Shown: positions 4,231 to 29,836 of the stretch, piece by piece
Numbering within the stretch: position 1 is the first letter of the stretch
Layout of the letters: each line of letters starts with the position of its first letter
NCBI RefSeq assembly: GCF_006345805.1
Contig: NW_021832664.1
Coordinates: forward strand, 1-29,836
From: Octopus sinensis
Taxonomy: Eukaryota
Length of the DNA stretch: 29,836 bases
Reading direction: 5' to 3'
Notes under the pieces: model-generated
Databases searched by the model: none
What the model saw: the letters and a program-made list of their open reading frames with translations, nothing else
What the model was told of the DNA's origin: nothing
Position numbers and translations under genes: made by a program

Positions 4231-5046
4231 GTCTGTCTGAGTATGGGAGTGTGTGTAAACATACACACACATACATATATATATAGGGATCCGTCGTTCT
4301 TCGTCCGTATGTTTTATATAAGGAGTGTGTGTGTGTGTGCGTTCGCGCGTTACGTGTTCTAATTATCTTCGATGTGTTCATGTAACACATTGTCAGCAAT
4401 GTACCAATTTTACTTGGCACACTGCTCTGTTATTGAAAAATCACAGGTGACATGTTTTGCAGGCCTGTTCCACAAATTTAGTAATTTCTTTCTACATTAC
4501 AAACAAAGACACATTCACAAGTAGACAAACAAATGGTTTGATTAGGGTATAATCAATTTGGCGAGGAAACTAAAGAGAAAATATTACGACGATGACCACC
4601 ACAGATCTACAATGGAAGAATTCACCACGTATAGTTGAGGGTAAAAGAAATCGTTGAACGACAGTAAGTACGTCCAAAATTTATAAAGCAGTGACATACA
4701 TACATACATAGATACTTGTAGCACACATGTATATACGTGCAGAGTGAAAATAAATCACACTATTTAATGTGACGGACTACACTGCAAAAAAATCAAAAAT
4801 TTCATTTCTGTTTACAACTTTCTCCGTGTCTATACGCACAATACTTTTATGTATACACACGCAATATTTAGAAAAAAAGGAATATACACAAAAAAGAACG
4901 AAACATGTGTATATACACACACAATATTTAAGAACAAGGAATATACACAAAAAGAACGAATCAAAACAAATATTTTATATTTTACTTTTATCGTATTGTT
5001 GTTTACATTTTCTGTCTCTACGGATGACCAGAACAACAGAATCGCC

Positions 5047-5413
5047 ATGGTGAAATCCATAGCGGCGTGCGATAAGACTGGTTGCTGCTCTAAAATAGAA
5101 CACTGCCCAGAAAATCACACCTGCCCATCTGTACGGAACCCGAAAATACGTTCCGTAATCGCTGGGTCGAATGTGGGACATGTCTCATCTCTGTCTGCCT
5201 CCAATGTGCCACGGACTTTCAGAAGATCCCAGGCCAAAAAAAGAGCCATCATAATGCTATGATGGATAGACTCTGGAAGTGGTTCAGCTTAAATCTTGGA
5301 CTTTTCAGTGTCAGCCTGCGTGCCTCCACAACCGACGATTGTGTCTCCCCCTGCCACTCCCGTGGAGGAGGCGGAACAGCAACAGCAGCAACAACAAAAT
5401 CAACCACAACCAG

Positions 5414-5446
<33 letters not shown>

Positions 5447-6263
5447 TAGAGCAAGCAACAACAAAATCAACCACAACCAAGCAGCAGCACAACAAAAATC
5501 AACACAACCAGAGCAGCAGCAACAACAACATCAACAACAACAACAGCAACAACAAAAAAATCAACCACAACCAGAGCAACAGCAGCAACAACAGCAACAC
5601 CAATTGACCAGTGCGGTTCTTGCAGAACTGCAACAATCGATCTGTGCTTTAAATGGGAAGTAGCAGGAATAAAAGCAACCATTCAGGTTGGACTCCACAA
5701 TGAGGGGTCTTCGGAATGCTCTGCTAAAGAACCTCCCTGTACCTGTACCTCTTGTCGCATTTAAGACCGCGGATTCTGCCACCCATGAAGTCATTGCCAT
5801 TGGGGTGCCAGAAGACATGGCTGATCTTCAGGCTTTTGCTGCCAACTCAGCCAAAGACCTAGGCTGCGTTCCCCCAACGGGTGCTATCCGCCTTGGACGA
5901 CCTGGCCCAAAACCTAGGCTCATCAAGTTGTCTTTTACGGACCCCACTGAGGCAACCTCTTACCATCTGGCCTCAGTTAAAGCTGGGCGGGAAAATCGGA
6001 CCACCTTCCGAACACGCCCAGGCTTACCGTCCGATGTACGTCCGAAGCTACGTGTAGTGGCTTCCCTGAATAGGAACTCAGCTCTACAGGAAAGCTTCAG
6101 TCTTCGGGAAGATGGACAAATCTGGAGATTTGTCAAGACTGCTGAAACGTGGAAGAGAGATACCAGCTGGTCTGAGTGCTCTCTACCCACAATAACTAAA
6201 AAGACTACAGCAACTCAGGGAACTAAGCCAGAACAACCTGCCATCCTCTACACACCATCATAA
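5047..6263 (+). pseudogene. CR1 ORF1 (PHD finger, poly-Q repeats, coiled coil, RRM-like region), frameshifted
   Basis: GCCATGG start at 5047. Joining frames gives CP(I)C-TEPENTFRNRWVE-CGTC-LISV-C-LQ-C...FQC(x)AC, a Q-rich tract, then VIAIGVPED...AIRLGRPGPKPRLIKLSF, typical of CR1 ORF1. Several 1-bp shifts. Confidence 0.75.
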
Positions 6264-6269
6264 ACTGCG

Positions 6270-9047
6270 AGCAGGGTACAAATTGTTGTCCTTAAATGCT
6301 CGCAGTTTATGCAACAAAATACATTTGTTCAACGCCTACGTCAGAAGTGTTGACCCTGACTTCATCACTGTCACGGAAACATGGCGCATTCCTTACTCTG
6401 TGATGGGGTTTTCAACATTACGGGGTACAACCTCTTCCGTAAGGACCGCACTAACCGCCGTGGTGGTGGTGTGATGGTCTACGTTCGTTCAAATTTTTTG
6501 GTAATTCCTTGTGCCGATTTGAACGAATCACAAGAAGAAGTTTTTTTCTGTGACGTGCGTATGACCATGTCAACACTCCTGCTTGGCGTTGTTTATCGTC
6601 CCCCAAGTTACCATCGGGACACACAGCTTTGCAATGTCCTCCGAGCTGCTGCCAGGAAAACAGCCACTTATGTGTTTATTGCAGGCGATTTCAATCATCC
6701 TGAGATCGATTGGGAGACCTTCCATTGGCCACAGAGTGCAAACGATTTTGTTGAGCTTGTGCTGGACTCAAACTGGTCACAAGTAGTCACCTCTCCAACA
6801 AGAGGCGACAACACCTTGGACCTGCTCTTCACCACAACTCCTGAAGCGTTATCAATTGCACTACGGAGGAACCTCTAGGTGACTCTGATCATGCTATGAT
6901 CATCGCCAATCTGGCTCTTGCGGGCAACAAAAACCTGAACCATCTCCAATCTGCTTCCTTCGATTGGAAGAGAGCAGATTGGAACCTGTACCACACTGAA
7001 CTACAGCACCCAAACTGGCGTGAATTCTACAACTCTGGAGATGTGAATACTATACTCCAGAGTATCCTGGACTCAATATGGGCAGCATGTGCAGCATCAG
7101 TGCCACGTAAACAAAAAAAGAAGAACCGCCCCAAAAGGGCAATTTGGGAAACTTCAGCGGTCCGACTTGCCAGGAAGGAACGTCGGACTGCTGAACGGGA
7201 ATACAGGTTGCATAAATCAGACACCAACAGGAAGAAGCGGAATAAATCCTCCAACCATCTCAAGCAGGTGACAAAAAAGGCAGTGCTTGAATTTGAACAG
7301 TGCATAGCAGCCAATCCTGACAGCAAGGTTTTCTGGAAATATGTGCACTCAAAGCAGAGACCTCACTCTCCAGTGGGCCCTCTTCGCAACCCTCACACAA
7401 ACCAGATCACTGACGACCCCAAGGAATGCGCAGAACTCATTGCCGAGTGCTATGCAACATATTCACTGTTGAAAGTCAAAATGTACCATCTTCACCATCA
7501 CTAACAGCAAACTCCATAACAACTATGGAATTTACACCTGCAATGCTGCGACGTCACCTTCAAAATAAGCGCAACTATGCCTCCCCTGGTCTCGATGGAG
7601 TTACATACCTGCTTCTCAAACGTGGCAGGCACTTCCTTTTACACCAGCTTTCTATTTTCTTCCAGTACTGTCTCAACAATGGTGCTACTCCGCGGAGCAG
7701 TGGAAAACTGCCAGTGTCATTCCTCTGTTCAAAAAGGGCGACCGCACATCACCTGTCAACTATCGCCCAGTCAGTCTCACTAGCTGTATTGCAAAACTGA
7801 TGGAATCGTGTGTCAGAGAAACACTCTGGAACTTCTGGAGCTCTCACAGTCTCATCCGACCCTCACAATATGGATTTGTCCCTAACTCCAGCTGCAGTGA
7901 CCAGCTTGTCGAGTTCCTTGAGGACATTACTCAGATTACTGACAGTGGCTCATGGGTGGATGTTGTCTACCTTGACTTTGCTAAGGCTTTCAACTCTGTG
8001 CCACACAAAAGGCTTATGGTGAAACTCTCTGCAATGGGTGTGGGGGATGACCTTTTTAACTGGTTGAAATCCTTCATCCTCAGCCGAAAGGAGGTAGTCA
8101 CAGTTCTAGGACAGCACTCTACACCATATGAGATGTCATCGGGTGTACCACAGGGATCTGTCCTTGGTCCCCTCTTGTTTGTGGCATACATTAACGACAT
8201 AGATGCCAATTTAAAGAATGCCACAGTATTGAAATATGCAGACGACATCAAGCTGTACCTTGAAATCAAGAGGACAGATCCTGATGTCTACAACTCTTTC
8301 CTGCAATCAGACCTAGACACAATGCAGCAATGGATCACAGACTGGCAACTGAAACTGGCTGTGGACAAGTGTACCACCATGCATTTTGGGAGAAAAAACC
8401 CTGCGTTCACATACTCCCTCCACAACACTGATATCAAGAAATCCTCTTGCGAGCGTGACCTAGGCATCACTGTCAGCAGTGATTTGCGTTGGTCAAAGCA
8501 TATCTCTAAGATTGTCAGGAAGGCCGAGGGTGTCTTGGCATCACTCAGCAGGTCTTTTGTTAGCCGCTCTCCAGCCATCTATTTAAAACTGTATACAGCT
8601 ATGGTACGACCACACTTGGAATTCGCATCATCAGTTTGGAACCCCTATCTTGCACAGAACATTGACCTCCTGGAATCTGTCCAGAGACGTGCAACCAAAC
8701 GCATACCCTCCATCAGACACCTACCATATTCTGAGCGCCTTGTTTCCCTGGGCATGGATTCACTGAAGCTCCGGCGTTTGGCGACGGACTTGGTAAACCC
8801 CACAAAGTTATCAACCACCTCACCAACAACAACACTGAACACCTTTTTGATCTCCATGTGTCTAACACACGTGGACATGCCTACAAAGTCAGAAAACAAT
8901 ACAGCTCCCATGACTTTCGGAACACATTTTTTCACGCTCAGAGTTGCTGAAGCATGGAATAAACTGCCTGCGTCAGTTGTTGACTGCCATGACACTGCAT
9001 CTTTTAAGGCCCTCATGCTTTCCGAAATCCGCCGAAACTACACCTGA
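6270..9047 (+). pseudogene. CR1 ORF2: apurinic-like endonuclease + reverse transcriptase, frameshifted
   Basis: APE motifs SLNARSL, ITVTETW, RGGGVMVYV, VVYRPP, AGDFNHP, TLDLLF, SDH. RT motifs SPGLDG, NYRPVSLTS, QYGF, VYLDFAKAF, GVPQGSVLGPLLF, YADD. The C-terminus has LESVQRRATK. Confidence 0.95.
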
Positions 9048-9408
9048 TTATATATACACTTTAGATGAGTTGTAGTGCACCTGAGCACTGTACACAATTA
9101 TTATTATTATTATTATTATTATTAAACAACAGGATTTAATGAATTTTTTTCTCTCTCGTAATTACAACAAATTAGAAATAAGCAAGGGAGTTTACACAAA
9201 CCGTTTAATTAGTTGATAACGTATCGTTCGTAGGTGCGTGTGTGTATTTATATATATATATATCTATATATTTATATATATATATATCTAATATTTATAT
9301 ATATATATCATATATTTATATATATATATCTATATATTTATAATATATCTATATATTTATTATATATATCTATATATTTATATATGTATATCTATATATT
9401 TATATATA

Positions 9409-9835: not shown

Positions 9836-10110
9836 GGTACTTTAACTTAAGTACCATATGTATGTATATTATATATATGTATATATATACATACAAAATA
9901 TATATACATATATGTGTGTATGTATATATATACATACATATACACACACAAATATCTATAAATAAATACATATGTATGTATATATATATATATATATGTG
10001 TTGTATGTATTATATATACATATATATATACATGCATATGTATTTATATATAGATATTTGTGTGTGTATATATCTGTATATATATACATATATATAATGT
10101 ATATATATAT
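9694..10110. repeat. (TA)n-rich compound microsatellite
   Basis: Direct inspection. Confidence 0.9.
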
Positions 10111-10340
10111 ATTGATTGAATTACAATAATCGTAATTTAACTTCTATCCAATTCTTTGGTGTCAAATTCCAGCAGCGGTTGTGCGGGTAGGAAAGAAATT
10201 TACCGCTCAACCACACAGCCCAGGGTTCGGTCCTTATAACTGTATGGGAATAGGCGTGGGCCCACTACAGATTTTTGAGTTGTTTTGGTGGAAAAGACCT
10301 GAAAGAAGCTCAACGCGCGTGTGTGTATGTATGTATATAT

Positions 10341-11050
10341 ATTTTCATTCTCTCTCTGGCTTTCATTCAGTCGTTTATCTAATTAATTATTTTTCCCCCT
10401 CAAATATAGTATTCAAACTAGTTGCTTCGATTCTCTCTCTCTCTCTCTCGTGTTTCCGTCCCCTTCCCTAATTCCCTTATAAAAGCCAGCGTGCGATCGT
10501 ATCTGATCCCTATTCACTCGCTACACCTTCAGAGAAAACACAGACTTCCAAAAATGGCCAGCTAAGTCAATTTCATCCTGCTCTTTTCATATTTTTAAGC
10601 GTTTTGTTTGGATAGCTTGATCTGTTCTCCCTTCGTTCCCCTATTCTCTAAACATGGCGACTTCATGCATTGCATTTTTAAAGTTTATTTTCCTTCAGGG
10701 CCATCTTCGATGTTTATCCCATTCTCCTCCGAAATATGCCCCCTCGTCTCTTACCGTATTTTTTTTTTTTTTTTTTTTTTTCATTATTTATCTATTCTCA
10801 TTCTCTACCGTATTTTTTTCATTATTTATCTATTTCCATTCTCTACCGTATTTTTTATTATTTATCTATTTTCATTCTCTCTCTGGCTTTCATTCAGTCA
10901 TTTATCTAATTAATTATTTTTCCCCCTCAAATATAGTATTCAAACTAGTTGCTTCGATTCTCTCTCTCTCTCTCTCGTGTTTCCGTCCCCTTCCCTAATT
11001 CCCTTATAAAAGCCAGCGTGCGATCGTATCTGATCCCTATTCACTCGCTA
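10341..11050 (+). repeat. ~527-bp tandem repeat, left part (partial + one full unit)
   Basis: CCCTATTCACTCGCTA occurs at 10508 and 11035 (period 527). Each unit has a (CT)n tract, a TATA box, a poly-T run and ~34-bp internal subrepeats. Confidence 0.95.
10959..11050 (+). promoter_or_regulatory. Putative Pol II core promoter of the tandem unit: (CT)n/GAGA tract, TATA box, initiator-like TATTCAC
   Basis: TATAAAA at 11005-11011, 30 nt before CCCTATTCAC. The same spacing recurs at 10478/10508 and 16813/16843. Promoter function is inferred. Confidence 0.5.
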
Positions 11051-11249
11051 GCCCTATTCACTCGCTACGACTGTTCATTTGCGTTGTGAGAAAATTGCTG
11101 CCTCCATTTAAGAGAGTTCGAATTTGTGATATTATTGTTTGTGCTAACTGTTTTGAACAGTGCCCGTTGTAAAACGGTAATTTTCGCCCTACGGGGCAGA
11201 AAATTTGTATTACCTGCATTTTTGTTACCTTCGAGGTAAATTTTTTGAA

Positions 11250-12674
11250 ATGGAGTTCGACTTGACGTCGAAGGAAGATTTTCCCGTGATGGGAAAAAGT
11301 GAAAACATGGAGAAACAAGTACCCAAACAGTCATTCTCGGCCGCGGTGGGCGGCGCCATGTTGGAGGTCGAATTTAAAATCGAACAGCTATACGAATACA
11401 GGAACCTAGTAAAAGTGGAAGGAGGCGAGATAAGGCTTGTACCGCCGCAAGCGAAAGTACAAGAAATCAAGGAAAGAATTGTGATCTATAAAGTGTACAG
11501 CTTTAAAGAAAAAAAGATTATGGACGTGAAAAATGAAATTGTCGAGAAGTGCCTGTCCCCGGTGTGGGACAGAATTCGTCATGTCGTGAGAGGTGCACGC
11601 AGTGCTACGGTCGAGGCGCATTTTGACACGGCAGAGGTGGCGAAAGAGGTGTCGTCGTTGACCCTAAAAAGCGACGACATCATGCTGCTACCCTCGTATA
11701 TGGGGAAGCGAACTGCAAAGTTAGTGGTAGAAGACATACCCAGAGGGTACGACATCATGTGGGTGGCAGCGGCGGTCTTGCACAACATGGAACGTGAAAT
11801 ATCAATACTGCAAATGAGAAGGAAGGAGGTGGTACGGTGGAAGGGTCAGACTCTGGAACTCCTCGTACAGGCAGAGAACAAGATCTTGGAGAGCCTGCCT
11901 GACAGAATCTTCAATGAGGACGGTACGTCCATGAGAGTTTCGGTAGAGGGACGTAGACCCAGATGCTTCAAGTGTGGAGAGAAGGGTCACGTCCGATCCA
12001 ACTGTATTAAGAAAAAAAGAACAGAAGAAACGCCTCCTCCAAGTGCACCTATCACTGAAGGGGAGGAAACAAGCAAAAACAACAAAATAACGAAGACAAG
12101 TACGGAAACAAAAACAGACCAAACAGAACTAATGGACTACACACAAGTCACTCATAAAAGAAAAAAAGAGAATACCCAGGACTCCCCTCCCCAAACAAGG
12201 AAAAAAACAACAAACACAGCAGACACACACATCAAGCAAATCCCCCAACCCTACCCCCATGGCACTGTTTTCATTGGAAAACAGTTTGCCAAGCCCCTCC
12301 CCATAAAACAAGACATAAAAAAGTGCTTACTGAAAAACGAAAGAATAATAGCTTTCGATGAGAAAAATGAGAAAGTTTACAAATGCTGCAAACTTTCGAG
12401 ATTTATGCTGTATAGTAGAACCTCAGATGGGAAAGCAACCGCTCGCTTCGCCAAGGTAGGGGAGAACGAGTGGAAGGAGGAGGTTCTTCAGGAACACCTG
12501 AGGAACCGTCTAATAAGAGATGTGACCAAGGAGGTAATGGAGGGCAAACTGACAATAACCCCGGCAACCACACCCACCCAGAGCCCAGTGGCAACGCCGG
12601 TCAAGAGCCCTGCAGCAGCGGAAGAAGGGGAAGCAGGCAGATGTAAACTGTCATGCTCCCTTTCCCAACCGTAA
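11250..12674 (+). CDS. Tx1 ORF1 (gag-like, CCHC zinc knuckle)
   Basis: Uninterrupted ORF; first ATG at 11250 (MEFDLTSKED). Contains RPRCFKCGEKGHVRSNC (CX2CX4HX4C) followed by a T/K/P-rich linker. Confidence 0.85.
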   Translation: MEFDLTSKEDFPVMGKSENMEKQVPKQSFSAAVGGAMLEVEFKIEQLYEYRNLVKVEGGEIRLVPPQAKVQEIKERIVIYKVYSFKEKKIMDVKNEIVEKCLSPVWDRIRHVVRGARSATVEAHFDTAEVAKEVSSLTLKSDDIMLLPSYMGKRTAKLVVEDIPRGYDIMWVAAAVLHNMEREISILQMRRKEVVRWKGQTLELLVQAENKILESLPDRIFNEDGTSMRVSVEGRRPRCFKCGEKGHVRSNCIKKKRTEETPPPSAPITEGEETSKNNKITKTSTETKTDQTELMDYTQVTHKRKKENTQDSPPQTRKKTTNTADTHIKQIPQPYPHGTVFIGKQFAKPLPIKQDIKKCLLKNERIIAFDEKNEKVYKCCKLSRFMLYSRTSDGKATARFAKVGENEWKEEVLQEHLRNRLIRDVTKEVMEGKLTITPATTPTQSPVATPVKSPAAAEEGEAGRCKLSCSLSQP

Positions 12675-12702
12675 GTACGTTTATTTTTCTCTCTCACTCA
12701 CA

Positions 12703-15700
12703 ATGGCTAAGCTGGGTTGTATAAATGTACGTGGAATGGGGTCGAAACGGAAACAAATTTGTTTCCTGAACGACCTCACGACACATGGTATAGATATTGC
12801 TATTGCAACCGAGTCCAAGATGAGCGAGACCCAAGCGTTCTCGCCTCTTCTAAATGGTTTCGAGAAATTTATTTCTCCTAGCCGAGGAAGAGGCAGAGGC
12901 GTGGCAGTCTTCATCAGGAAGAGCTTGGACTTGCAGGTAAGTACTGTCTTTCTGGACCCAGAAGGCAGGCTGGTTGTCCTGGATGTGACTCACGTAAGTA
13001 AACAGTCCTTCAGGTTGGTAGCTGTCTACGCCCCGAACGAGGGTAGACAGACGGGTTTTTTCCGGAACCTGGAGCCCTTTTTAGCGACGTCGAAAACAGT
13101 AATCCTAGTAGGGGACTTTAACACTGTCCTTGAAGCGCACATCGACAATGTTGGCTCAACCAATAGGAAGGGGAACCCTAGCCTCAAGGGTCTACTAGAG
13201 AGCTTTGATCTAGTGGACCGTTACCGACTGGATGAGCCGAGCGTTCCACAGTGGACGTGGAGTAACAACGACGGCTCACACAGATCGTATCTAGATAGGA
13301 TATTTATTAAGAAAAGAGATAAGGATACGTTTAGTTGTCCACAATTTCATATTGTACCTTACTCGGATCACAAATTTGTGACGTGTGAGGTGCAATTAGA
13401 CAAGTGTCATAGACAGGGACCGGGTACTGGAAGCTGAACAAGGCTATTTTGAATTGTGAAGACTTCCGTACCCGGATTAAGGTGTTAGTTCAGAGGGCAT
13501 TGTGTGGCACCATCATTAACAATAGATGGTGGCACGCCCTCAAAAGAGCCATTCGTTTAGAGTCCGTTAGATTTAGCAATCAGCTAAGGATAGATAGGGC
13601 TAGTCTAGAGGGCGATTTAGTTAAGAATCTAGACGAGGCAATGGAAGCTGGCTCTGCATCCGGAGTGTTGGCGGCAAGGACGGTATTGTACCGTCACTTT
13701 AACTCCAAACACGAAGGTTGCAGAGTCAGAGCTAAGCTGCGCGCTGGAAACGAGAAGGTATTAACGTGGCCGGATGGGCCCGTCGTGTGGGGAGAGTAAG
13801 AGAGGCAACAGAGCCTCAATCAAATCTTTGACTGACGAACAGGGACAAAAGATCTATGGACAGGAGGAGATGCAAAAGTTTCTTCACCAGCATTTCGCTC
13901 GCGTGTTCGGGGGGGTGGTGGTTCGCTGGATCGGGGGAGGGCCTTAAAGGACTTCCTAGCCGGCGGACCGCGGCTCGCGGGGCGTGAGGTGGAGTGCTGT
14001 GAAGGAGCGATCACTCCCGCGGAGATAAAGGAGATACTGGCCGGATGCGCCGGGGAGAAGTCGCCGGGGTTGGATGGTCTGCCCTACGAGTTTTACCAAA
14101 GTATGCCGGACTTGTTCGGGGGAATACTGGCAGGCGTCTACACGAACTGGCAGCAGAATGGGAGAATTCCCAGTTCTGTAAGCCGGGGAGTGGTGACGCT
14201 AATCCAGAAAGACCCGAGCAAGGGGGATAATATTAGTAACTACAGGCCCATAACTCTACTTAATGTAGAGTTAAAGATTTTGGCCAAGGTTAGCAAAAAG
14301 GTTGACGGTTGTCGTGGAGAAACTTGTAGGGAGAGCACAGACATGTGCAATTCCAGGCAGGTCGATCCAGGACAATCTTCACCTTATACGCTACACCTTA
14401 GATAGGGTGGGTAAATTAGCCGGCAAAGGCGGGGTAATGGTCCATTTAGACCAAAGTAAAGCCTTCGATAGGGTAGACCATGGGTACCTGGCGACGGTCC
14501 TCGAAGCGACTGGGCTGGGCCCTGAATTTCGCGGGTGGATCTCCGCTATGTATAGCGGCATCAAGTCCACCGTCCAGATAAACGGTTACCTAACGGAACC
14601 GTTTTCGATCGAGTGTTCAGTGCGTCAGGGGTGCCCCTTGTCACCACTTTTGTACGTATTGGCTCTTGAGCCACTGCTGCGAAAGTGGAGAGGGGAGAGG
14701 GGGAGTAACTCGGATGAAATCGGAGGTGGGAGGACGGTTACTGCTTATGCGGATGACGTCACCCTCATCGTGTCCAAAGAGGCCCAACTACCTTGTGTAG
14801 AGGAGGCTATCAGAGGATACGAGGCGGTGGCAGGAGCAAAGGTTAACAAGGACAAATCGGTTGGCTTGCGCCTCGGCACCTGGAGGAGCAAGTCGATATC
14901 ACAGTGTCGTGGGACACTGGACGGATGGCCCTGTTAAGTTGCTGGGAGTTGGTTGGGACCAGACTCCCAAACGGAGAAGAACTGGAGTGAGGTGACGAGC
15001 AAGGTGGAGGCCATAGTACGGACCTGGTCCGGAAGGTCTCTGTCCTTGAAAGGAAAGGCGGAGGTGGTACAGATGTTCATTGCATCTGTAATCACCTACC
15101 GCCTGACCGTTGTCCCTTGCCCCGATTCATGGCTTAACAAGTTGGAACGAATCCTTTTCCGCTTTTTGTGGAAAGGAGGAAAGCCACTTGTGAGGCGCTC
15201 CGTTTGCTGCCAAGAACCGTTAAGGGTGGTTAGGGATGCCTTGGTTGATGATGCGCAGACATGCGTTGAGGCTAAGGCATCTCTGGCACCACCTGGAGGT
15301 GATAAGGTGTGGAGTCCGCTGGCAGAGGGATTTTTCCCGAGACCGGCCTCCTTAGTGAATTTTAAACCCGGTTACATCAAAAGATGGAAACTGACTCCAT
15401 GGCAAAAGGAGTGCCGACAGGCACTCACGCTGATCCACAAGGCGGGCAAGGCCGGCTGCGGAAATACCACCTCGGTATTTTATAGAGGGCTGGTAGAGGC
15501 AAAAAATGACGACGTCCTAGGAGGGGCTCTGGGGTTTGATGAAGACCAGCTTGCCAACCTGTTTAAAAAAACTTTCAGGTCGGGTATTTGGATAATTTCC
15601 AAAGATCCCTGGCCTGGCAGTGCTATAGGAATGCTTTACCTGTTCGCGAGAAGTTATCGCGGCACGGAGTTTCAGTGCCACCGACGTGTCAAGGTGCGAG

Positions 15701-16100
15701 TTGGACGATGAAACCGTCCAGCACGCTTTTGTTCACTGTCGGAAGTTGTCCGACTTGATAAGTTACGCAGAACACGTGTTATCGCATCTGGGACGAGTAC
15801 AGCTGTCGGCTGAGTCTATGATTAAGATGATACCGCCAACTGGACTCTCGAAGGAAGGTGAGGCATGTTTTCACTGCACGGTTGCAGTAGTAAAGGAATG
15901 CATGTGGAGAACGAAATGGAAGGAGCCGCGATAGGATCCTTTGTCTCCGGCCCGCTTGCTCACTTACTTCAGATATCATCTGAAGAGCAAATGGGGCTGG
16001 AAAGAGGATCTTACCGCGGGGTGTGTATGAGAAAAGATGGAAGGAAGTGGAAAGAAAGGTGGGTGTGAGAAACCCAGCTTGACCATGGAGGAGAGAGAGA
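12703..16100 (+). pseudogene. Tx1 ORF2: APE endonuclease + reverse transcriptase + CCHC finger, frameshifted (3' end approximate)
   Basis: MAKLGCINVRG, IATESK, VYAPNE, VGDFN, WTW, SYLDRIF, SDH. RT motifs KSPGLDGLP, NYRPITLLN, HLDQSKAFDRVDH, VRQGCPLSPLLY, AYADD. C-terminal C(x)RC-ELDDETVQ-H-AFVH-C. Confidence 0.93.
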
Positions 16101-16314
16101 AGTGGAAGCTGCAGGGCCTCATAAATTGCCGGGGTGTAAAGGCTCCAGTGAGACTAAAGTTCATCTACTGTTGTTTTTTATACTGGTTATGCAAAGGATA
16201 TTATTTTATAATGAATCTAAACAAAATTTTTAATCGAATCTCTTAAATGTTTTTTGTTGTATGTCCTGTATTGGTCCTTCTGTTCTCGATTTTCATAATC
16301 TTAATAAAGAAATA

Positions 16315-17299
16315 CCCTATTCACGCTACACACACCTTCAGAGAAAACCAGACTTCCAAAAATGGCCAGCTAAGTCCAATTTCATCCTGCTCTTTTCATA
16401 TTTTTAAGCGTTTTGTTTGGATAGCTTGATCTGTTCTCCCTTCGTTCCCCTATTCTCTAAACATGGCGACTTCATGCATCTGCATTTTTAAAGTTTATTT
16501 TCCTTCAGGGCCATCTTCGATGTTTATCCCATTCTCCTCCGAAATTGCCCCCTCGTCTCTTACCGTATTTTTTTTTTTTTTTTTTTTTTTATCATATTTC
16601 TCTTTCTCTTCTCTACCGTATTTTTTTCATTATTTATCTATTCCATTCTCTACCGTATTTTTTATTATTTAATCTATTTTCATTCTCTCTCTGGCTTCAT
16701 TCAGTCATTTATCTAATTAATTATTTTTCCCCCTCAAATATAGTATTCAAACTAGTTGCTTCGATTCTCTCTCTCTCTCTCTCTCGTGTTCCGTCCCCTT
16801 CCCTAATTCCCTTATAAATGACAGCGTGCGATCGTATCTGATCCCTATTCACTCGCTACACCTTCAGAGAAAACACAGACTTCCAAAAATGGCCAGCTAA
16901 GTCAATTTCATCCTGCTCTTTTCATATTTTTAAGCGTTTTGTTTGGATAGCTTGATCTGTTCTCCCTTCGTTCCCCTATTCTCTAAACATGGCGACTTCA
17001 TGCATTGCATTTTTAAAGTTTATTTTCCTTCAGGGCCATCTTCGATGTTTATCCCATTCTCCTCCGAAATATGCCCCCTCGTCTCTTACCGTATTTTTTT
17101 TTTTTTTTTTTTTTTTTTCATTATTTATCTATTCTCATTCTCTACCGTATTTTTTTCATTATTTATCTATTTCCATTCTCTAACGTATTTTTTATTATTT
17201 ATCTATTTTCATTCTCTCTCTGGCTGGCTTTCATTCATTCATCATTTATTAATTATTATTTCCCCCTCAAATATAGTATTCAAACTAGTTGCTTCGATT
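16315..17299 (+). repeat. ~527-bp tandem repeat, right part (one full unit + one unit cut by the RTE element)
   Basis: The unit resumes at the TSD; the next CCCTATTCACTCGCTA is at 16843 (period 528). The sequence diverges after GCTTCGATT at 17299. Confidence 0.95.
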
Positions 17300-17496
17300 T
17301 TGTCGCCCGCCCTCCCACCCCCACCACCAATACCGGAAGTTTCTACCCTAATACCGGAAACTACCCCCTCCCCCACTAGCACCTATGTAGGGTTTATCTG
17401 AACATATAGTGCAAAAATTGTGAAAAGTATGCAGGTTGTAGTCTAGAGTTTCCATATGAAATCTGCCAAATGCAAGCTTTCTTTTCAGGTACATGA

Positions 17497-20400
17497 CACG
17501 CTGTCCCTCGTCCCAGGGTCTCTGATGCCCACACCTCCCAAACCCTCAGAGTTGGCACGCTCAACGTTGGCACATTGAAAGGTAGGTCTGGAGAGATTGT
17601 AGAGCTGCTTGAACGGAGACGTGTGGATGTATGCTGTATCCAGGAAGTAAGGTGGAGAGGAGGTTCTGCTAGGCTCCTCACGGGCAAGGAACACAGGTAC
17701 AAGATTTTCTGGGCAGGGAACATTGACGGTGTCGGGGGCGTGGGTATACTTCTTGCGGAGAAATGGATAGGTAAGGTAATCGAGGTAGTCAGAATAAGTG
17801 ACAGAGTAATTAAAATTAGATTAGTTCTTCACCATAGGACAGCTACCATCATCTCGGCATATGCCCCTCAACCAGGGCTACCGAAGGACAAAAAGACCAA
17901 TTCTATGACACCCTATTGCGGACTACCTCATTGACAAATGACAGTGACCTTCTCTTCGTGGCAGGTGATTTCAATGGACATGTTGGACGACATGTCAGGG
18001 GCTTCCATGGCATCCATGGAGGCCACGGTTTTGGCTCTCGAAATGAGGAGGGAACCAGGCTGCTGGAGTTCTGCGATGCAAATGACCTTATGGTCTGCAA
18101 TACCCACTTCAGGAACCCACCTCTCACCTAGTCACCTACCGTTCTGGCAGACACACCAGCCAGATTGACTACATCCTTGCCAGAAAAAGGGAAAGAGGGC
18201 TGATTATAAATGCCAAAACCTTCCCAGGCGAAGAATGTACTCCCCAACATAGATTAGTAGTTAGCGACTTCAGGATCAGAGCTAAATGGTCGCCCAGAAG
18301 AAGACCAGCTTGGAGGAGAAGGGTCTGGAAGCTTAAAGATCCTGCAAATGCACAGAGATTTAGAGACATACTACTCGAAGCCTCTGACGAAATAGAAGGG
18401 GATATAGCTTCACTTAATGTGGAAGACAACTGGAGATTCCTACGGGACAATCTGCTGACAGCCACTGACCAGATCTGTGGATGGAGCAAAGTACCATCTC
18501 GACCCAGAGTAACATGGTGGTGGAACACGGTGGTTGACGGGGCTATTAGACAAAAGAGACAGGCTTGGAAGGACTGGAAGAACGGTGGTAGCAGGGAATT
18601 GTATCAGACAGCCAAAAGGGAAGCTAGGAGACAGGTTTATATAGCCAGAGGGGAAGCGGATAAGAAAAAATTTGCCAATGTTCTGAGCCGTGAGGATGAA
18701 AGACTTGAGGTATTTCGTGTTGCAAGACAGTGTGTGAGAGAGAATCGTGATGTGGTAGGAGAGAAGTGTGTTCGCATGGATGATGGTTCACTTGCGCTAA
18801 ATGAGGATGCAAAGAGAGAGGTTTGGAGATGCCACTATGAAAGTTTGCTGAATAAAGAAAATGAATGGGATAAAGAGAGTCTGCCAAATGTTGACCCACA
18901 GAGGGACCAGCTATCCGAGTTGATAGTTCCGTGGTAGCTAAGGCAATTAGAAGCATGAAGACAGGAAAGCCCCAGGCCCATCAGGAATTACTGCAGAGAT
19001 GCTCAAAATATCTGGCAGTGTCGGCTATAACCTAGTCACCCGTATAGTCAACCAGGTGATACACGAAGGAGTCATACCCAATGACTGGTGTAGCAGCATA
19101 CTAGTCAACTGCTACAAAGGTAAAGGTGATGCCCTGGATACAAATAATTACAGAGGTATCAAGCTGTTGGATCAGGTAATGAAGGTTACGGAGAGGGTCT
19201 TAGCCCAACTAATTAGAGAGAGAGTTAGTTTAGATGAGATGCAGTTTGGGTTTGTCCCAGGGAAAAGCACCACTGATGCTATATTCCTGGTAAGGCAGCT
19301 GCAGGAGAAATACCTAGCCAAGGATAAGCCCCTGTACCTGGCTTTTGTTGACATGGAGAAAGCCTTTGATAGGGTCCCCCGATCCCTCATCTGGTGGTCA
19401 ATGAGGAACTAGGGATAGATGAATGGCTGGTGAGGGCTGTGCAAGCCATGTACAGAGATGCCGTAAGTAAGGTTAGAGTTGGCAACATGTACACAGAAGA
19501 ATTCAAAGTAGAGGTTGGGGTCCACCAGGGTTCAGTACTCAGCCCCCTCCTATTTATCATAGTCCTCCAGGCAATAACGGAGGAATTCAAGACAGGTTGC
19601 CCCTGGGAGCTCCTCTATGCTGACGACCTCGCTCTAATCGCTGAGTCACTATCAGAACTGGAGGAGAAGTTCCAGGTGTGGAAGGAGGGTTTAGAATCGA
19701 GGGGCCTTAGAGTCAACCTAGCTAAAACCAAAGTACTAATAAGTAGAAAGGTAGAAAACCACAAATATCATCAGGAAGATGGCCCTGCTCGATCTGTAGA
19801 AAAGGTGTAGGTAGAAACTCTATAAGATGTACCCAGTGTAAGCTATGGACACATAAGAGGTGCAGCAATGTCAAAGGTAGGCTAACTGGGAAGATAGTTT
19901 TTGTATGTGGCAGGTGCTCTGGAGCACTGACCTCCGAAAATCTGCAGAAAACAACTTCTGTCACTTTCCGGGGGAAAAACTAGAAGTAGTTGATAGTTTC
20001 CGCTATCTAGGTGACCAAGTCAGTAGTGGGGGTGGGTGCGCTGAAAGTGTAACTGCTAGAATAAGAATAGCCTGGGCAAAGTTTAGGGAGCTCTTACCTC
20101 TGCTGGTGACTAAAGGCCTCTCGCTCAGAGTAAAAGGCAGACTGTATGATGCATGTGTACGAACAGCTATGCTACATGGCAGTGAAACATGGGCCGTGAC
20201 TGCTGAGGACATGCGTAAGCTCGTGAGGAACGAAGCCAGTATGCTCCGATGGATGTGTAATGTCAGTGTACTTACTCGACAGAGCGTTAGTACCTTGAGA
20301 GAAATGTTGTACCTAAGAAGCATCAGTTGTTGTGTGCAAGAGAGACGATTGCGCTGGTATGGTCATGTGGCGAGAATGGATGAAGAGAGGTGTGTGAGAA

Positions 20401-20567
20401 AGTGCCAATCCCTAGCAGTTGAGGGAACCCGTGGAAGAGGTAGACCCAGGAAAACCTGGGACGAGGTGGTGAAGCACGACCTTCGGACGTTAGGTCTCAC
20501 CATGGAAATGACTAGAGACCGAGACCTATGGAAGTATGCTGTGCGTGAGAAGACCCGGCAAGACTAG
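17497..20567 (+). pseudogene. RTE ORF: APE + RT + PHD finger + C-terminal domain, frameshifted
   Basis: TLNVGTL, CCIQEVRW, SAYAPQ, AGDFNGHVG, QIDYIL; NYRGIKLL, QFGFVPGKSTTDAIF, AFVDMEKAFDRVPR, GVHQGSVLSPLLF, LYADDL; RRLRWYGHVARM, RGRGRPRKTW. Confidence 0.93.
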
Positions 20568-20765
20568 TGAAGCCATAATCCGTGGCCCCTACCTGGGACG
20601 TAGTCAGTCCACCTGTGCATACCTTCCTTCTTGTGACACTTGTGAAGACCTGTTGAGGCAAGTGAGAATCGAATCGTATCAAATCAAATCGAACCAAATC
20701 AAAATAGATGAACATCAATGGAATTTGTATCCTTGTGGTACCAGTGCCGGTGGCACATAAGAAAA

Positions 20766-21205
20766 CCATCCGAACGTGACCGTAGCCAGTACCGCAATGA
20801 CTGGCCTCCGTGCTGAGGGCACGTAACAAACACCATCCGAGCGTGGCCGTCCGCCAGCCTCGTCTAGCACCTGTGTCGGTGACACATAAGAAACCCATCC
20901 GAGCGTGGCCGTCTGCCAGCCTCGTCTGGCACCTGTGTCGGTGGCACATAAAAACACCATCCGAGCGTGGCGTCTGCCAGCCTCGTCTGGCACCTGTGTC
21001 GGTGGCACATAAAAAACAACACCATCCGAGCGTGGCCGTCTGCCAGCCTCGTCTGGCACCTGTGTCGGTGGCACATAAAAACACCATCCGAGCGTGGCCG
21101 TCTGCCAGCCTCGTCTGGCACCTGTGTCGGTGGCACTAAAAACACCATCCGAGCTTGGCCTTCTGCCAGCCTCGTCGGCACCTGTGTCGGTGGCACATAA
21201 AATCA
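20766..21205 (+). repeat. ~62-bp minisatellite in the RTE 3' UTR
   Basis: Six near-identical units of ACCATCCGAGCGTGGCCGTCTGCCAGCCTCGTCTGGCACCTGTGTCGGTGGCACATAAAAAC (20832-21205), plus a diverged unit from 20766. Confidence 0.95.
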
Positions 21206-21372
21206 CCCCACACAACTCTCGGAGTGGTTGGCGTTAGGAAGGGCATCCAGCTGTAGAAACACTGCCACATCTGACTGGCCTGGTGCAGCCTTCGGGCTTC
21301 CAGACCCCAGTTGAACCGTCCAACCATGCTAGCATGGAAAGCGGACGTTAAACGATGATGATGATGATGATA

Positions 21373-23616: not shown

Positions 23617-24031
23617 GGCGGTGAGCTGGCAGAAACGTTAGCACGCCCGGCGAAATGCGTAGCCGTATTTCGTCTGTCGATCCGTTCCGAGTTCAAATTC
23701 CGCCGAGGTCGACTTTGCCTTTCATCCTTTCGGGGTCGATAAATTAAGTACCAGTGATACACTGAGGTCGATATAATCGACTTAATCCGTTTGTCTGTCC
23801 TTGTTTGTCCCCTCTGTGTTTAGCCCCTTGTGGGTAATAAAGAAATAGGTATTTCGTCTGCCGTTACGTTCTGAGTTCAAATTCCGCCGAGGTCGACTTT
23901 GCCTTTCATCCTTTCGGGGTCGATTAAATAAGTACCAGTTATACACTGAGGTCGATATAATCGACTTAATCCCTTTGTCTGTCCTTGTTTGTCCCCTCTG
24001 TGTTTAGCCCCTTGTGGGTAGTAAAGAAATA
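23617..24031 (+). mobile_element. SINE family B, dimeric copy
   Basis: GGCGGTGAGCTGGCAGAAACG head and box B GAGTTCAAATTCC. The first unit ends TAATAAAGAAATA (23847) and the second restarts at GGTATTTCG. Confidence 0.9.
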
Positions 24032-29369: not shown

Positions 29370-29836
29370 GAGCTGGCAGAAACGTTAGCACGCCGGGCGA
29401 AATGCTTTGCGGTATTTCGTCTGTCGTTACGCTGTGAGTTCAAATTCCGCCGAGGTCGACTTTGCCTTTCATCCTTTCGGGGTCGATAAATTAAGTACTA
29501 GTTACGCACTGGGGTCGATGTAATCGACTTAATACCTATGTCTGTCCTTGTTTGTCCCCTCTGTGTTTAGCCCCTTGTGGGTAATAATGAAATAGGTATT
29601 TCGTCTGTCGTTACGCTGTGAGTTCTAATTCCGCCGAGGTCGACTTTGCCTTTCATCCTTTCGGGGTCGATAAATTAAGTACCAGGTACGGCACGGGGTT
29701 TTCGATGTAATCGACTTAATACCTATGTCTGTCCTTGTTGTCCCTCTAAGTTTAGCCCCTTTTGGGTAATAAAGAAATGGTATTTCGTCTGTGTTACGTT
29801 CTGAGTTCAAATTCCGCCGAGGTCGACTTTGCCTTT
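29370..29836 (+). mobile_element. SINE family B, trimer or longer (runs off the window)
   Basis: GAGCTGGCAGAAACG head; further units restart at GGTATTTCGTCTG at ~29595 and ~29779. Confidence 0.9.

What the first reader, a model, noticed from the sequence alone, without database searches (positions are those of the whole stretch)
10341..17299. Unidentified ~527-bp tandem unit built like a small Pol II transcription unit
Seen: about 3.2 near-identical units, each with a (CT)n tract, TATA box, Inr-like TATTCAC, a GACTT...AAGTC hairpin in the first ~65 nt, a strong acceptor-like TTTATTTTCCTTCAG, a poly-T run and three ~34-bp subrepeats. I could not match it to U1-U7, 7SK, 5S, tRNA, SL RNA or histone genes from memory. 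Two different LINEs (Tx1, RTE) interrupt it. Inference: it may be an undescribed multicopy ncRNA gene, a tandem LTR/TRIM-like unit or a transcribed satellite. Being a Tx1 target argues for a conserved multicopy locus.
Basis: partly seen in the sequence, partly recalled or inferred. Interest (0 to 1): 0.7.

Follow-up and report, generated by a model that had tools for sequence, protein, structure and literature searches.

The report
Octopus tandem repeat targeted by LINE
A 527-bp sequence repeated about 3.2 times head to tail is real, but it looks like an uncharacterised satellite-type repeat used as a landing site by an L1/Tx1-type retrotransposon, not like a recognisable RNA gene.

Summary
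A 527-bp unit is repeated 3.19 times on the + strand (10336-17299), and full-length copies are 97-99% identical. One unit is split by a 5.26-kb L1/Tx1-type LINE. An RTE-like LINE ends the array.

The "Pol II gene" reading has no positive support:
- Rfam gave no match, even at E<=10.
- The predicted transcript start folds no better than shuffled sequence (z +1.2 and +0.6; hairpin z -0.8).
- No unit ORF has a protein relative.
- The unit is 70% pyrimidine on the + strand, so TATA-, Inr- and acceptor-like strings are expected by chance.

The new information lies in the LINE junctions. There is a 16-17-bp target-site duplication (CCCTATTCACTCGCTAC). A third copy of it, preceded by an extra G, sits at the LINE 5' end. 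The target site starts exactly 30 bp downstream of the unit's only TATAAA, and the LINE is in sense orientation (chance of the spacing about 0.8%). This points to repeated use of one site, which implies a multicopy target, and possibly to transcription of the LINE from the unit.

Tx1-clade LINEs are known to target satellites and transposons as well as RNA genes. I therefore read the unit as a satellite-like Tx1 target. Copy number, conservation and transcription could not be tested with these tools.

The parts
10336..10862 (+). Unit 1 of the 527-bp tandem repeat (complete). It contains (TC)9 10432-10449, TATAAAAG 10478-10485, the LINE target sequence CCCTATTCACTCGCTAC 10508-10524, T23 10759-10781 and 38-bp subrepeats 10775-10880.
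10863..11050 (+). Unit 2, 5' part. TATAAAAG starts at 11005. The part ends with the left target-site duplication CCCTATTCACTCGCTA at 11035-11050.
11051..11068 (+). An extra G (11051) followed by a third copy of the 17-nt target sequence (11052-11068), joined to the LINE 5' end. Read either as a leader carried by the LINE RNA from an identical source site, or as the footprint of an earlier hit at the same site.
   Evidence: (TRF 17-bp x1.9, 100%)
11069..16314 (+). Body of the L1/Tx1-type LINE. 5'UTR 11069-11249, with a structured region at 11130-11240. ORF1 11250-12674 (474 aa, intact, zf-CCHC). ORF2 is broken into at least 5 frames: EN 12703-13437, 13449-13799, 13989-14405, RT 14302-14937, C-terminal piece 14953-15711. 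The 3' end reads ...TTAATAAAGAAATA.
16315..16671 (+). Unit 2, 3' part. It begins with the right target-site duplication (16315-16329, CCCTATTCAC--GCTAC, decayed). This is the most diverged of the long copies.
16672..17199 (+). Unit 3 (complete). Its TATA variant is TATAAATG.
17200..17299 (+). Unit 4, only the first 97 unit positions, 92-94% identical to the other copies. It ends exactly where the (TC)n tract would begin.
17300..20735 (+). RTE-like LINE that ends the array. EN starts at about 17540 and RT lies at about 18951-19810. There are many frame breaks, and the last ORF stops at 20567. A SINE-like block with 62-bp repeats and a (GAT)n tail follows, to about 21372.

Best explanation
The locus is a short array (3.2 copies) of an uncharacterised 527-bp tandem repeat. 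The repeat is satellite-like, 70% pyrimidine on the + strand, and carries its own (TC)9 tract, T-run and 38-bp minisatellite. It serves as the dedicated integration target of an L1/Tx1-type LINE.

Shown:
- The LINE endonuclease made staggered nicks 16-17 bp apart around CCCTATTCACTCGCTAC, which produced the target-site duplication.
- The LINE lies in the same orientation as the pyrimidine-rich strand.

Inferred:
- The same site in the same kind of unit has been used more than once, because a third copy of the target sequence sits at the LINE 5' end.
- The element is therefore site-specific, and the unit must exist in many copies in this genome.
- Like other Tx1-clade elements, the LINE parks in repeats where it does little harm.

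More speculative: the site begins 30 bp downstream of the unit's only TATAAA, and an untemplated G precedes the extra copy. The LINE may therefore be transcribed from the unit, with the RNA starting at C of CCCTATTCAC. In that case the unit would work as a promoter donor and not as a gene for a structured RNA.

A later RTE-like insertion, probably accompanied by a deletion, removed the right-hand continuation of the array.
For: - Tandem structure and identities.
- LINE identity: Exo_endo_phos, RVT_1 and an ORF1 zinc knuckle. Among solved structures its closest relatives are L1 endonuclease and L1 ORF2p.
- LINE boundaries: the 3' terminus ...AATAAAGAAA(TA) matches a related O. sinensis element (83% nt identity over ORF2).
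- Junctions read directly from the sequence. Left...GATCCCTATTCACTCGCTA-G-CCCTATTCACTCGCTAC-GACTG... Right...AAGAAATA-CCCTATTCAC(--)GCTAC...
- The related O. sinensis element has a clean 18-bp duplication and also sits in a short repeated unit of about 356 bp. Insertion into repeats therefore recurs in this LINE group.
- Literature: Tx1-clade elements are typically target-specific. Their targets include satellites, microsatellites, DNA transposons and small RNA genes (PMC4494074; PMC1950540). O. vulgaris carries 13 recently active L1-Tx1 families (PMC13282606).
- Against an RNA gene: no Rfam match; folding z-scores of +1.17 and +0.60; no protein relatives of any unit ORF.
- TATA-to-site spacing: a TATAWA lies 28-34 nt upstream of a fixed site in 0.8% of shuffles.
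Against: - Only one locus could be examined. No second copy of the unit or of this LINE subfamily was reachable, so multicopy status and site-specificity rest on one junction.
- The extra 17-nt copy coincides exactly with the extent of the duplication. This fits two successive hits at one site at least as well as it fits an RNA leader, so the transcription-start inference is weak.
- The array is very short for a satellite.
- The O. sinensis relative uses an unrelated target (Smith-Waterman score 20 against 22 +/- 2.6 for shuffles). Target choice is therefore not conserved across subfamilies.
- The absence of an Rfam match cannot exclude a lineage-specific unstructured RNA.
Confidence: 0.55

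Rival explanations
1. The unit is a genuine multicopy Pol II transcription unit: a lineage-specific capped ncRNA or lncRNA gene, or at the extreme a spliced-leader-like gene. It would have GAGA-type (CT)n elements, a TATA box at -30 and a start at CCCTATTCAC. A promoter-less Tx1-type LINE inserts at +17 to be transcribed from the gene's promoter. This would resemble the retrotransposons that sit in trypanosome and nematode spliced-leader genes.
For: - TATAAAAG lies exactly 30 bp upstream of the start of the duplicated target in every unit that retains this region (u1, u2; TATAAATG in u3). The chance of this spacing is about 0.8%.
- The LINE is in sense orientation.
- An untemplated G followed by a copy of the first 17 nt sits at the LINE 5' end. 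That is what reverse transcription of a capped read-through RNA would leave.
- CpGs cluster around the site (6 of 17 lie within 70 bp).
- Tx1-clade elements do target small RNA genes.
Against: - No Rfam family matches, even at E<=10.
- Positions +1 to +93 and +1 to +143 fold worse than shuffled sequence.
- There is no convincing Sm site, and no canonical GT donor at the AG|CTAAGT that resembles a 5' splice site, read from the sequence.
- The motifs are at chance level for a 70% pyrimidine strand.
- The extra copy equals the extent of the duplication, which a double hit explains without any transcription start.
- To my knowledge SL trans-splicing has not been reported in cephalopods. A literature search found nothing.
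Confidence: 0.15
2. The array is the internal tandem-repeat region of a non-autonomous DNA transposon or another composite element. It would be the octopus counterpart of Xenopus Tx1D, whose internal repeats are the specific target of Tx1L. Its termini would lie outside the array or have been destroyed.
For: - Short dispersed-type array (3.2 units) instead of a long satellite block.
- Tx1L/Tx1D precedent, and Tx1 families that target Mariner and Harbinger elements.
- The related O. sinensis LINE sits in a short unit bounded by a 61-nt palindrome and 114-bp repeats, which looks like a MITE or foldback element.
Against: - No terminal inverted repeats were found around the array.
- The left flank 10113-10335 is unique in the window.
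- The right end is lost to the RTE-like LINE.
Confidence: 0.15
3. The units belong to the downstream RTE-like LINE. They would be either promoter 'monomers' of its 5' end, like mouse L1 monomers, or a 5'-transduced or template-switched piece of array transcript carried along when that LINE retrotransposed into a TA/TG microsatellite.
For: - The array and the RTE-like LINE are on the same strand and abut directly at 17299/17300.
- The array does not resume after the LINE.
- Both outer flanks of the block 10336-21372 are TA/TG microsatellite.
Against: - TA microsatellites are everywhere in this window, so the flanks carry no information.
- The left end of the array (unit position 1) is not at the putative start site (position 173).
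- RTE elements are not known to me to carry monomer arrays.
- No second RTE copy was available to test this.
Confidence: 0.07
4. The array is a purely local tandem duplication with no family elsewhere, hit by chance by a LINE that is not site-specific. The doubled 17-mer arose by replication slippage.
For: No other copy was found in any searchable collection. These collections hold almost no cephalopod DNA.
Against: - A slippage duplication would have to coincide to the base with the boundaries of the duplication.
- The differing divergence among units and the decayed edge copy are typical of an older, homogenised repeat.
Confidence: 0.08

Closest known systems
Tx1L LINE in the internal tandem repeats of Tx1D (Xenopus laevis)
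   Same: An L1/Tx1-type LINE with an APE endonuclease is inserted at one defined sequence inside a repeat unit of a few hundred bp that is itself tandemly repeated, and it leaves a target-site duplication. Stringent targeting by the Tx1L endonuclease is documented (PMC1950540; PMC4494074). The details of the tandem repeats in Tx1D come from my own knowledge.
   Different: No transposon termini are seen around the octopus array. The unit sequence is unrelated. The duplication is 16-17 bp. Clade membership of the octopus LINE was not tested by phylogeny.
Tx1-clade families that target satellites, microsatellites or small RNA genes (Keno/U2, Mutsu/5S, Kibi/(TC)n, 'Sat' targets in Kojima 2015)
   Same: Target-specific parking in multicopy sequences. 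The possibility of transcription from the flanking target is discussed there (PMC4494074).
   Different: The target here matches no known RNA family and is not a microsatellite. Cephalopod examples with a defined target have not been described in the papers I could search.
Spliced-leader-gene retrotransposons (SLACS/CZAR/CRE1 in trypanosomatids, NeSL-1 in nematodes) and R2 in 28S rDNA
   Same: These LINEs sit a few nucleotides downstream of, or inside, a host transcription unit in sense orientation. They depend on host transcription, and upstream target sequence carried on the RNA shapes the 5' junction (own knowledge; R2 co-transcription is cited). Here the insertion lies at +17 from a TATA-predicted start, with a target-derived leader.
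   Different: Those elements use a restriction-like endonuclease, not an APE one. Their hosts are proven genes. Here, transcription of the unit is unproven, and no 5' ribozyme was detected.
Mouse L1 5' monomer arrays
   Same: Tandem units of a few hundred bp with promoter-like content lie directly upstream of a LINE on the same strand (the array abuts the RTE-like element).
   Different: The units are also the target of a different LINE. There is no evidence that other RTE copies carry them. The left end of the array is not at the putative start site.

Membership tests
Known small RNA gene families (snRNA, SL RNA, 5S, 7SK, tRNA, others in Rfam) | Match to a curated covariance model | tested here: not met
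   No match at gathering score in the whole window. No match at E<=10 in 10100-11100. No tRNA.
Known small RNA gene families (snRNA, SL RNA, 5S, 7SK, tRNA, others in Rfam) | Thermodynamically stable, non-random secondary structure of the transcript | tested here: not met
   10508-10600 gives z +1.17, 10508-10650 gives z +0.60, and the hairpin 10540-10572 gives z -0.8.
Known small RNA gene families (snRNA, SL RNA, 5S, 7SK, tRNA, others in Rfam) | Conservation of the transcribed part across species, and evidence of a transcript | not testable with these tools
   No cephalopod genome or transcriptome can be searched by DNA. All indirect routes were empty.
Spliced-leader RNA gene | Short 5' exon ending at a GU donor, followed by an Sm-binding site between stem-loops | tested here: not met
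   Read from the sequence. The splice-site-like string is AG|CTAAGT, which has C at +1. The only GT nearby is AA|GTCAAT. AUAUUUUUAAG lacks the G of an Sm site. No stable stem-loops were found.
Satellite / tandem repeat DNA | Head-to-tail copies of one unit with high identity and no coding capacity | tested here: met
   3.19 copies at 96-99% identity. No protein relatives of any ORF in six frames.
Satellite / tandem repeat DNA | Many copies or long arrays genome-wide | not testable with these tools
The window holds only this array.
Target of a site-specific Tx1-clade LINE | LINE with APE endonuclease, RT and a zinc-knuckle ORF1, bounded by a target-site duplication | tested here: met
   Pfam; PDB relatives L1 EN and L1 ORF2p; 16-17-bp duplication; 3' end confirmed against the O. 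sinensis relative.
Target of a site-specific Tx1-clade LINE | Independent copies of the LINE occupy the same sequence position in the target | tested here: inconclusive
   The only evidence is indirect: a third copy of the target 17-mer at the LINE 5' end. The one other related element found (O. sinensis) is a different subfamily in a different target.
Target of a site-specific Tx1-clade LINE | RT phylogeny places the LINE in the Tx1 clade | not tested
   No reference set of LINE clades was available. The only indications are nearest-L1 similarity and the ORF1 type.
LTR / TRIM-like unit | LTR pair flanking an internal region with PBS and PPT; poly(A) signal in R | tested here: not met
   Units abut directly. 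There is no AATAAA on the + strand.
LINE 5' promoter monomers (mouse L1 type) | Monomer array present at the 5' end of many copies of the same LINE family | not testable with these tools
   Only one RTE-like copy is available. There is none in the rest of the window or in the 60 kb of other octopus DNA that was fetched.

The most novel reading that the evidence does not exclude
The 527-bp unit is a promoter-bearing, multicopy Pol II transcription unit of octopods that encodes an undescribed, unstructured capped RNA. A promoter-less Tx1-type LINE has specialised in inserting at +17 of it to borrow its promoter. This would be an APE-endonuclease analogue of the spliced-leader-gene retrotransposons, and it would flag a new abundant RNA gene family in cephalopods.
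Probability: 0.12. Interest if true: 0.7.

Novelty: new member of a known kind. Interest (0 to 1): 0.33.

Why it matters
If the inference holds, this is a defined target sequence for a cephalopod Tx1-type LINE. L1-Tx1 families are recently active in octopus genomes, but their target preferences have not been described in the papers I could search.

A LINE that lands reproducibly 30 bp downstream of a TATA box, in sense orientation, would be a clean natural case of promoter borrowing by an APE-type LINE. It would also give a handle on a repeat family that may be transcribed.

If the unit is only a satellite with a chance TATA, the locus is ordinary repeat annotation.

Tried and rejected
1. Rfam at gathering score on the window, at E<=10 on the unit, on the LINE 5' junction and on the O. 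sinensis junction. Result: no RNA family and no HDV-like ribozyme.
2. tRNA scan: none.
3. Protein routes to other genomic copies:
   - ORF1 search gave one O. sinensis protein at 50% identity.
   - EN search gave five weak octopus hits.
   - A concatenated six-frame translation of the unit gave no hit at E<=10.
   - Exact look-up of ten window ORFs found none in the collection.
4. Exact-pattern scans of viral, metagenome and prokaryote contigs. The single hit, L004, is a chance 23-mer in a 60% GC bacterial contig.
5. O. bimaculoides locus L002: the related LINE there is truncated at both ends, so it has no junctions.
6. Homology between the window unit and the O. sinensis target: none. The shared TTCA(C)TCGCTAC inside the two duplications lies at different offsets from the nicks, so I do not treat it as a recognition motif.
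7. Alignment of the two 5'UTRs to fix the true LINE 5' end: only one hairpin is conserved, so this was not decisive.
8. A search for resumption of the array, or a duplication, after the RTE-like LINE: none.
9. Literature searches for an octopus satellite, cephalopod SL trans-splicing or a Tx1 target in cephalopods: nothing specific. The original Tx1D papers are not held.


Full report
**What is there**

The window looks like octopod DNA. The only protein relatives of its LINE ORFs are from Octopus sinensis and O. bimaculoides. It is full of (TA)n microsatellites and 184-bp SINE-like repeats.

Between 10336 and 17299 a 527-bp unit is repeated head to tail on the + strand:
- u1: 10336-10862.
- u2: 10863-11050 and 16315-16671, split by an insertion.
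- u3: 16672-17199.
- u4: the first 97 positions only, 17200-17299.

There is no further copy in the window. Substitution identity is 98.7% for u1/u3 and 98.9% for u1/u2-5'. It is 96.3-96.6% for the half-unit downstream of the insertion, with 7-8 indel events, and 92-94% for the edge copy u4. The subrepeats are 38 bp x 2.8.

**Are the 'gene-like' features more than chance?**

The + strand of the unit is 70% pyrimidine (T 44.6%, C 25.4%, A 19.9%, G 10.1%).
- A TATAWA occurs somewhere in 38% of shuffled units.
- Fourteen YYANWYY matches occur per unit.
- A polypyrimidine-AG string is therefore unremarkable.

The other tests were also negative:
- Rfam finds nothing at gathering score in the whole window, and nothing even at E<=10 over 10100-11100.
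- ARAGORN finds no tRNA.
- The predicted transcript start folds no better than shuffles: 10508-10600 gives z +1.17 and 10508-10650 gives z +0.60.
- The GACTT...AAGTC hairpin is -4.3 kcal/mol, and 40 of 200 shuffles fold as well.
- No ORF of the unit in any of six frames has a relative among 5.8 billion protein clusters. None is present as an exact sequence.
- There is no AATAAA on the + strand, and units abut without an internal region, which argues against an LTR/TRIM reading.

Taken on its own, the unit looks like an anonymous tandem repeat with an internal minisatellite.

**The insertion in unit 2**

Positions 11069-16314 are a LINE on the + strand.
- ORF1 is intact: 474 aa, 11250-12674, with a CCHC zinc knuckle.
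- ORF2 has Exo_endo_phos (12703-13437) and RVT_1 (14302-14937) and is broken into at least five frames.
- Among solved structures its endonuclease and RT are closest to L1 endonuclease and L1 ORF2p.
- The zinc-knuckle ORF1 fits the L1/Tx1 group (own knowledge).

A related element in O. sinensis (L001 9747-15272) is 83% identical in nucleotides over ORF2 and 50% in amino acids over ORF1. It ends in the same ...ATAATAAAGAAA motif, which fixes the 3' boundary of the window element at 16314.

**The junctions**

This is the informative part. All of it is read directly.
- An intact unit reads ...TATAAAAGCCAGCGTGCGATCGTATCTGAT CCCTATTCACTCGCTAC ACCTTCAG...
- The left junction reads ...GAT CCCTATTCACTCGCTA G CCCTATTCACTCGCTAC GACTGTTC(LINE).
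- The right junction reads (LINE)AAGAAATA CCCTATTCAC--GCTAC ACACACCTTCAG.

There is therefore a 16-17-bp target-site duplication. In addition, a third copy of the same 17-mer is fused to the LINE 5' end, preceded by a G that is not in the target. TRF independently reports the 17-bp x 1.9 perfect repeat.

Two readings are possible:
- (a) The LINE RNA carried 17 nt of upstream target sequence, because its source copy sat at the same site of an equivalent unit and was transcribed from within that unit. The extra G would then be the reverse-transcribed cap, as is known for full-length L1 insertions (own knowledge).
- (b) The site was hit twice, and the first event left only a duplication.

Reading (b) naturally explains why the extra copy has exactly the extent of the duplication. 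Reading (a) needs that as a coincidence. Either way the same site was used at least twice. That makes the LINE site-specific and implies that the unit is multicopy in this genome. A slippage duplication that coincides to the base with the boundaries of the duplication is unlikely.

**Position of the site**

The duplicated sequence starts at 10508 in u1 and 11035 in u2. This is exactly 30 bp downstream of the first T of the unit's only TATAAA (10478 and 11005). The LINE is in the sense orientation relative to it. A TATAWA falls 28-34 nt upstream of a fixed site in 0.8% of shuffles. CpGs are somewhat clustered there (6 of 17 lie within 10449-10519).

This is the only feature that speaks for promoter function. 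It is post hoc and rests on a single junction, so I treat promoter donation to the LINE as a minority-to-even possibility. I treat a bona fide RNA gene as a clear minority possibility.

No 5' ribozyme was detected in the LINE leader. The leader is, however, significantly structured (11130-11240, z -2.93), with one hairpin conserved in O. sinensis.

**Comparison with the O. sinensis relative**

That element has a simple 18-bp duplication (TTTCATCGCTACCTGGTG at L001 9729 and 15273). Once the LINE is removed, it also lies in a short repeated structure: 114-bp direct repeats about 356 bp apart, with a 61-nt palindrome.

Its target is not homologous to the 527-bp unit (local alignment score 20 against 22 +/- 2.6 for shuffles). 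The two duplications share TTCA(C)TCGCTAC, but at different offsets from the nicks, so I leave this unexplained.

The O. bimaculoides relative is truncated and uninformative.

**The right end of the array**

At 17299/17300, unit position 97 is joined to an RTE-like LINE on the + strand, exactly where (TC)n would begin. This LINE has EN from about 17540 and RT at about 18951-19810, with many frame breaks. It belongs to a different clade from the first LINE and from a third LINE at about 4849-9124 (RT identities 26-35%).

After its last ORF (stop at 20567) come:
- a short 3'UTR;
- a SINE-like block with 62-bp repeats;
- a (GAT)n tail at about 21372;
- TA/TG microsatellite.

The unit never resumes. 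The RTE-like element therefore ends the array and is not shown to interrupt it. Three explanations remain open and cannot be separated here: an insertion-associated deletion, a 5'-transduced or template-switched array transcript, or monomer-type promoter units belonging to that LINE.

**What is known**

Tx1-clade LINEs are typically target-specific. Documented targets are U2, U5 and 5S genes, satellites, (TC)n and (TTC)n microsatellites, and DNA transposons of the piggyBac (Tx1D), Mariner and Harbinger types. Transcription from the flanking target has been proposed for their dependants and is established for R2 (PMC4494074; PMC1950540).

O. vulgaris has 13 recently active L1-Tx1 families (421 insertions), but no targets are described (PMC13282606). 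I found no report of this repeat, of an octopus satellite of this size, or of SL trans-splicing in cephalopods.

**Verdict**

- The tandem unit is real.
- It is best read as a satellite-like repeat that is the landing site of a site-specific L1/Tx1-type LINE, which makes it a new member of a known kind. Confidence 0.55.
- The reading as an undescribed RNA gene is not excluded but has no positive support beyond the TATA-to-site spacing. Probability about 0.12-0.15.
- Copy number, cross-species conservation and transcription were not testable here, because no cephalopod genome or transcriptome can be searched by DNA with these tools. These are the decisive tests, and they are simple to run elsewhere.

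Noticed in passing
window 11130-11240; L001 9877-9903: The 5'UTR of the L1/Tx1-type LINE is significantly structured (z -2.93). One hairpin (AATTTTCGCCCTACGGGGCAGAAAATT, 11178-11204) is conserved with two changes in the O. sinensis relative, although the rest of the 5'UTR has diverged. No Rfam ribozyme or other family matches.
   Followed up: partly
L001 9491-9746 and 15291-15560 (O. sinensis chromosome CM016868.1): The related O. sinensis LINE also sits inside a short repeated structure: 114-bp direct repeats about 356 bp apart once the LINE is removed, and a 61-nt near-perfect palindrome. This suggests a MITE- or foldback-like target. Its 18-bp duplication shares TTCA(C)TCGCTAC with the window's duplication, at a different offset.
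   Followed up: partly
window 20736-21372: A SINE-like block lies directly after the RTE-like LINE. It has a 62-bp unit repeated 6.3 times (20818-21207), then a conserved-looking tail that ends in (GAT)n. It may be the LINE's own 3'UTR and tail, or a partner SINE.
   Followed up: no
window 4849-9124: A third LINE of another clade lies on the + strand. It has EN at 6381-6878, RT at 7800-9047, an (AAC)n tract at 5375-5603, and ends in (ATT)9 at 9097-9124. All three LINEs in the window have the same orientation.
   Followed up: partly
window 16315-16671: The half-unit downstream of the LINE is clearly more decayed than its neighbours (96.3-96.6% identity against 98.7-98.9%, with 7-8 indel events). 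The insertion may have excluded it from homogenisation with the other units.
   Followed up: partly
window 23665-24031, 29411-29836, 2644-2703: 184-bp SINE-like units occur as tandem dimers (92-95% identical). ARAGORN called no tRNA gene in them.
   Followed up: no
window 10113-10335: A 223-bp stretch between a long (TA)n microsatellite and the array is unique in the window and unclassified. It could be a terminal part of whatever element carries the array.
   Followed up: partly
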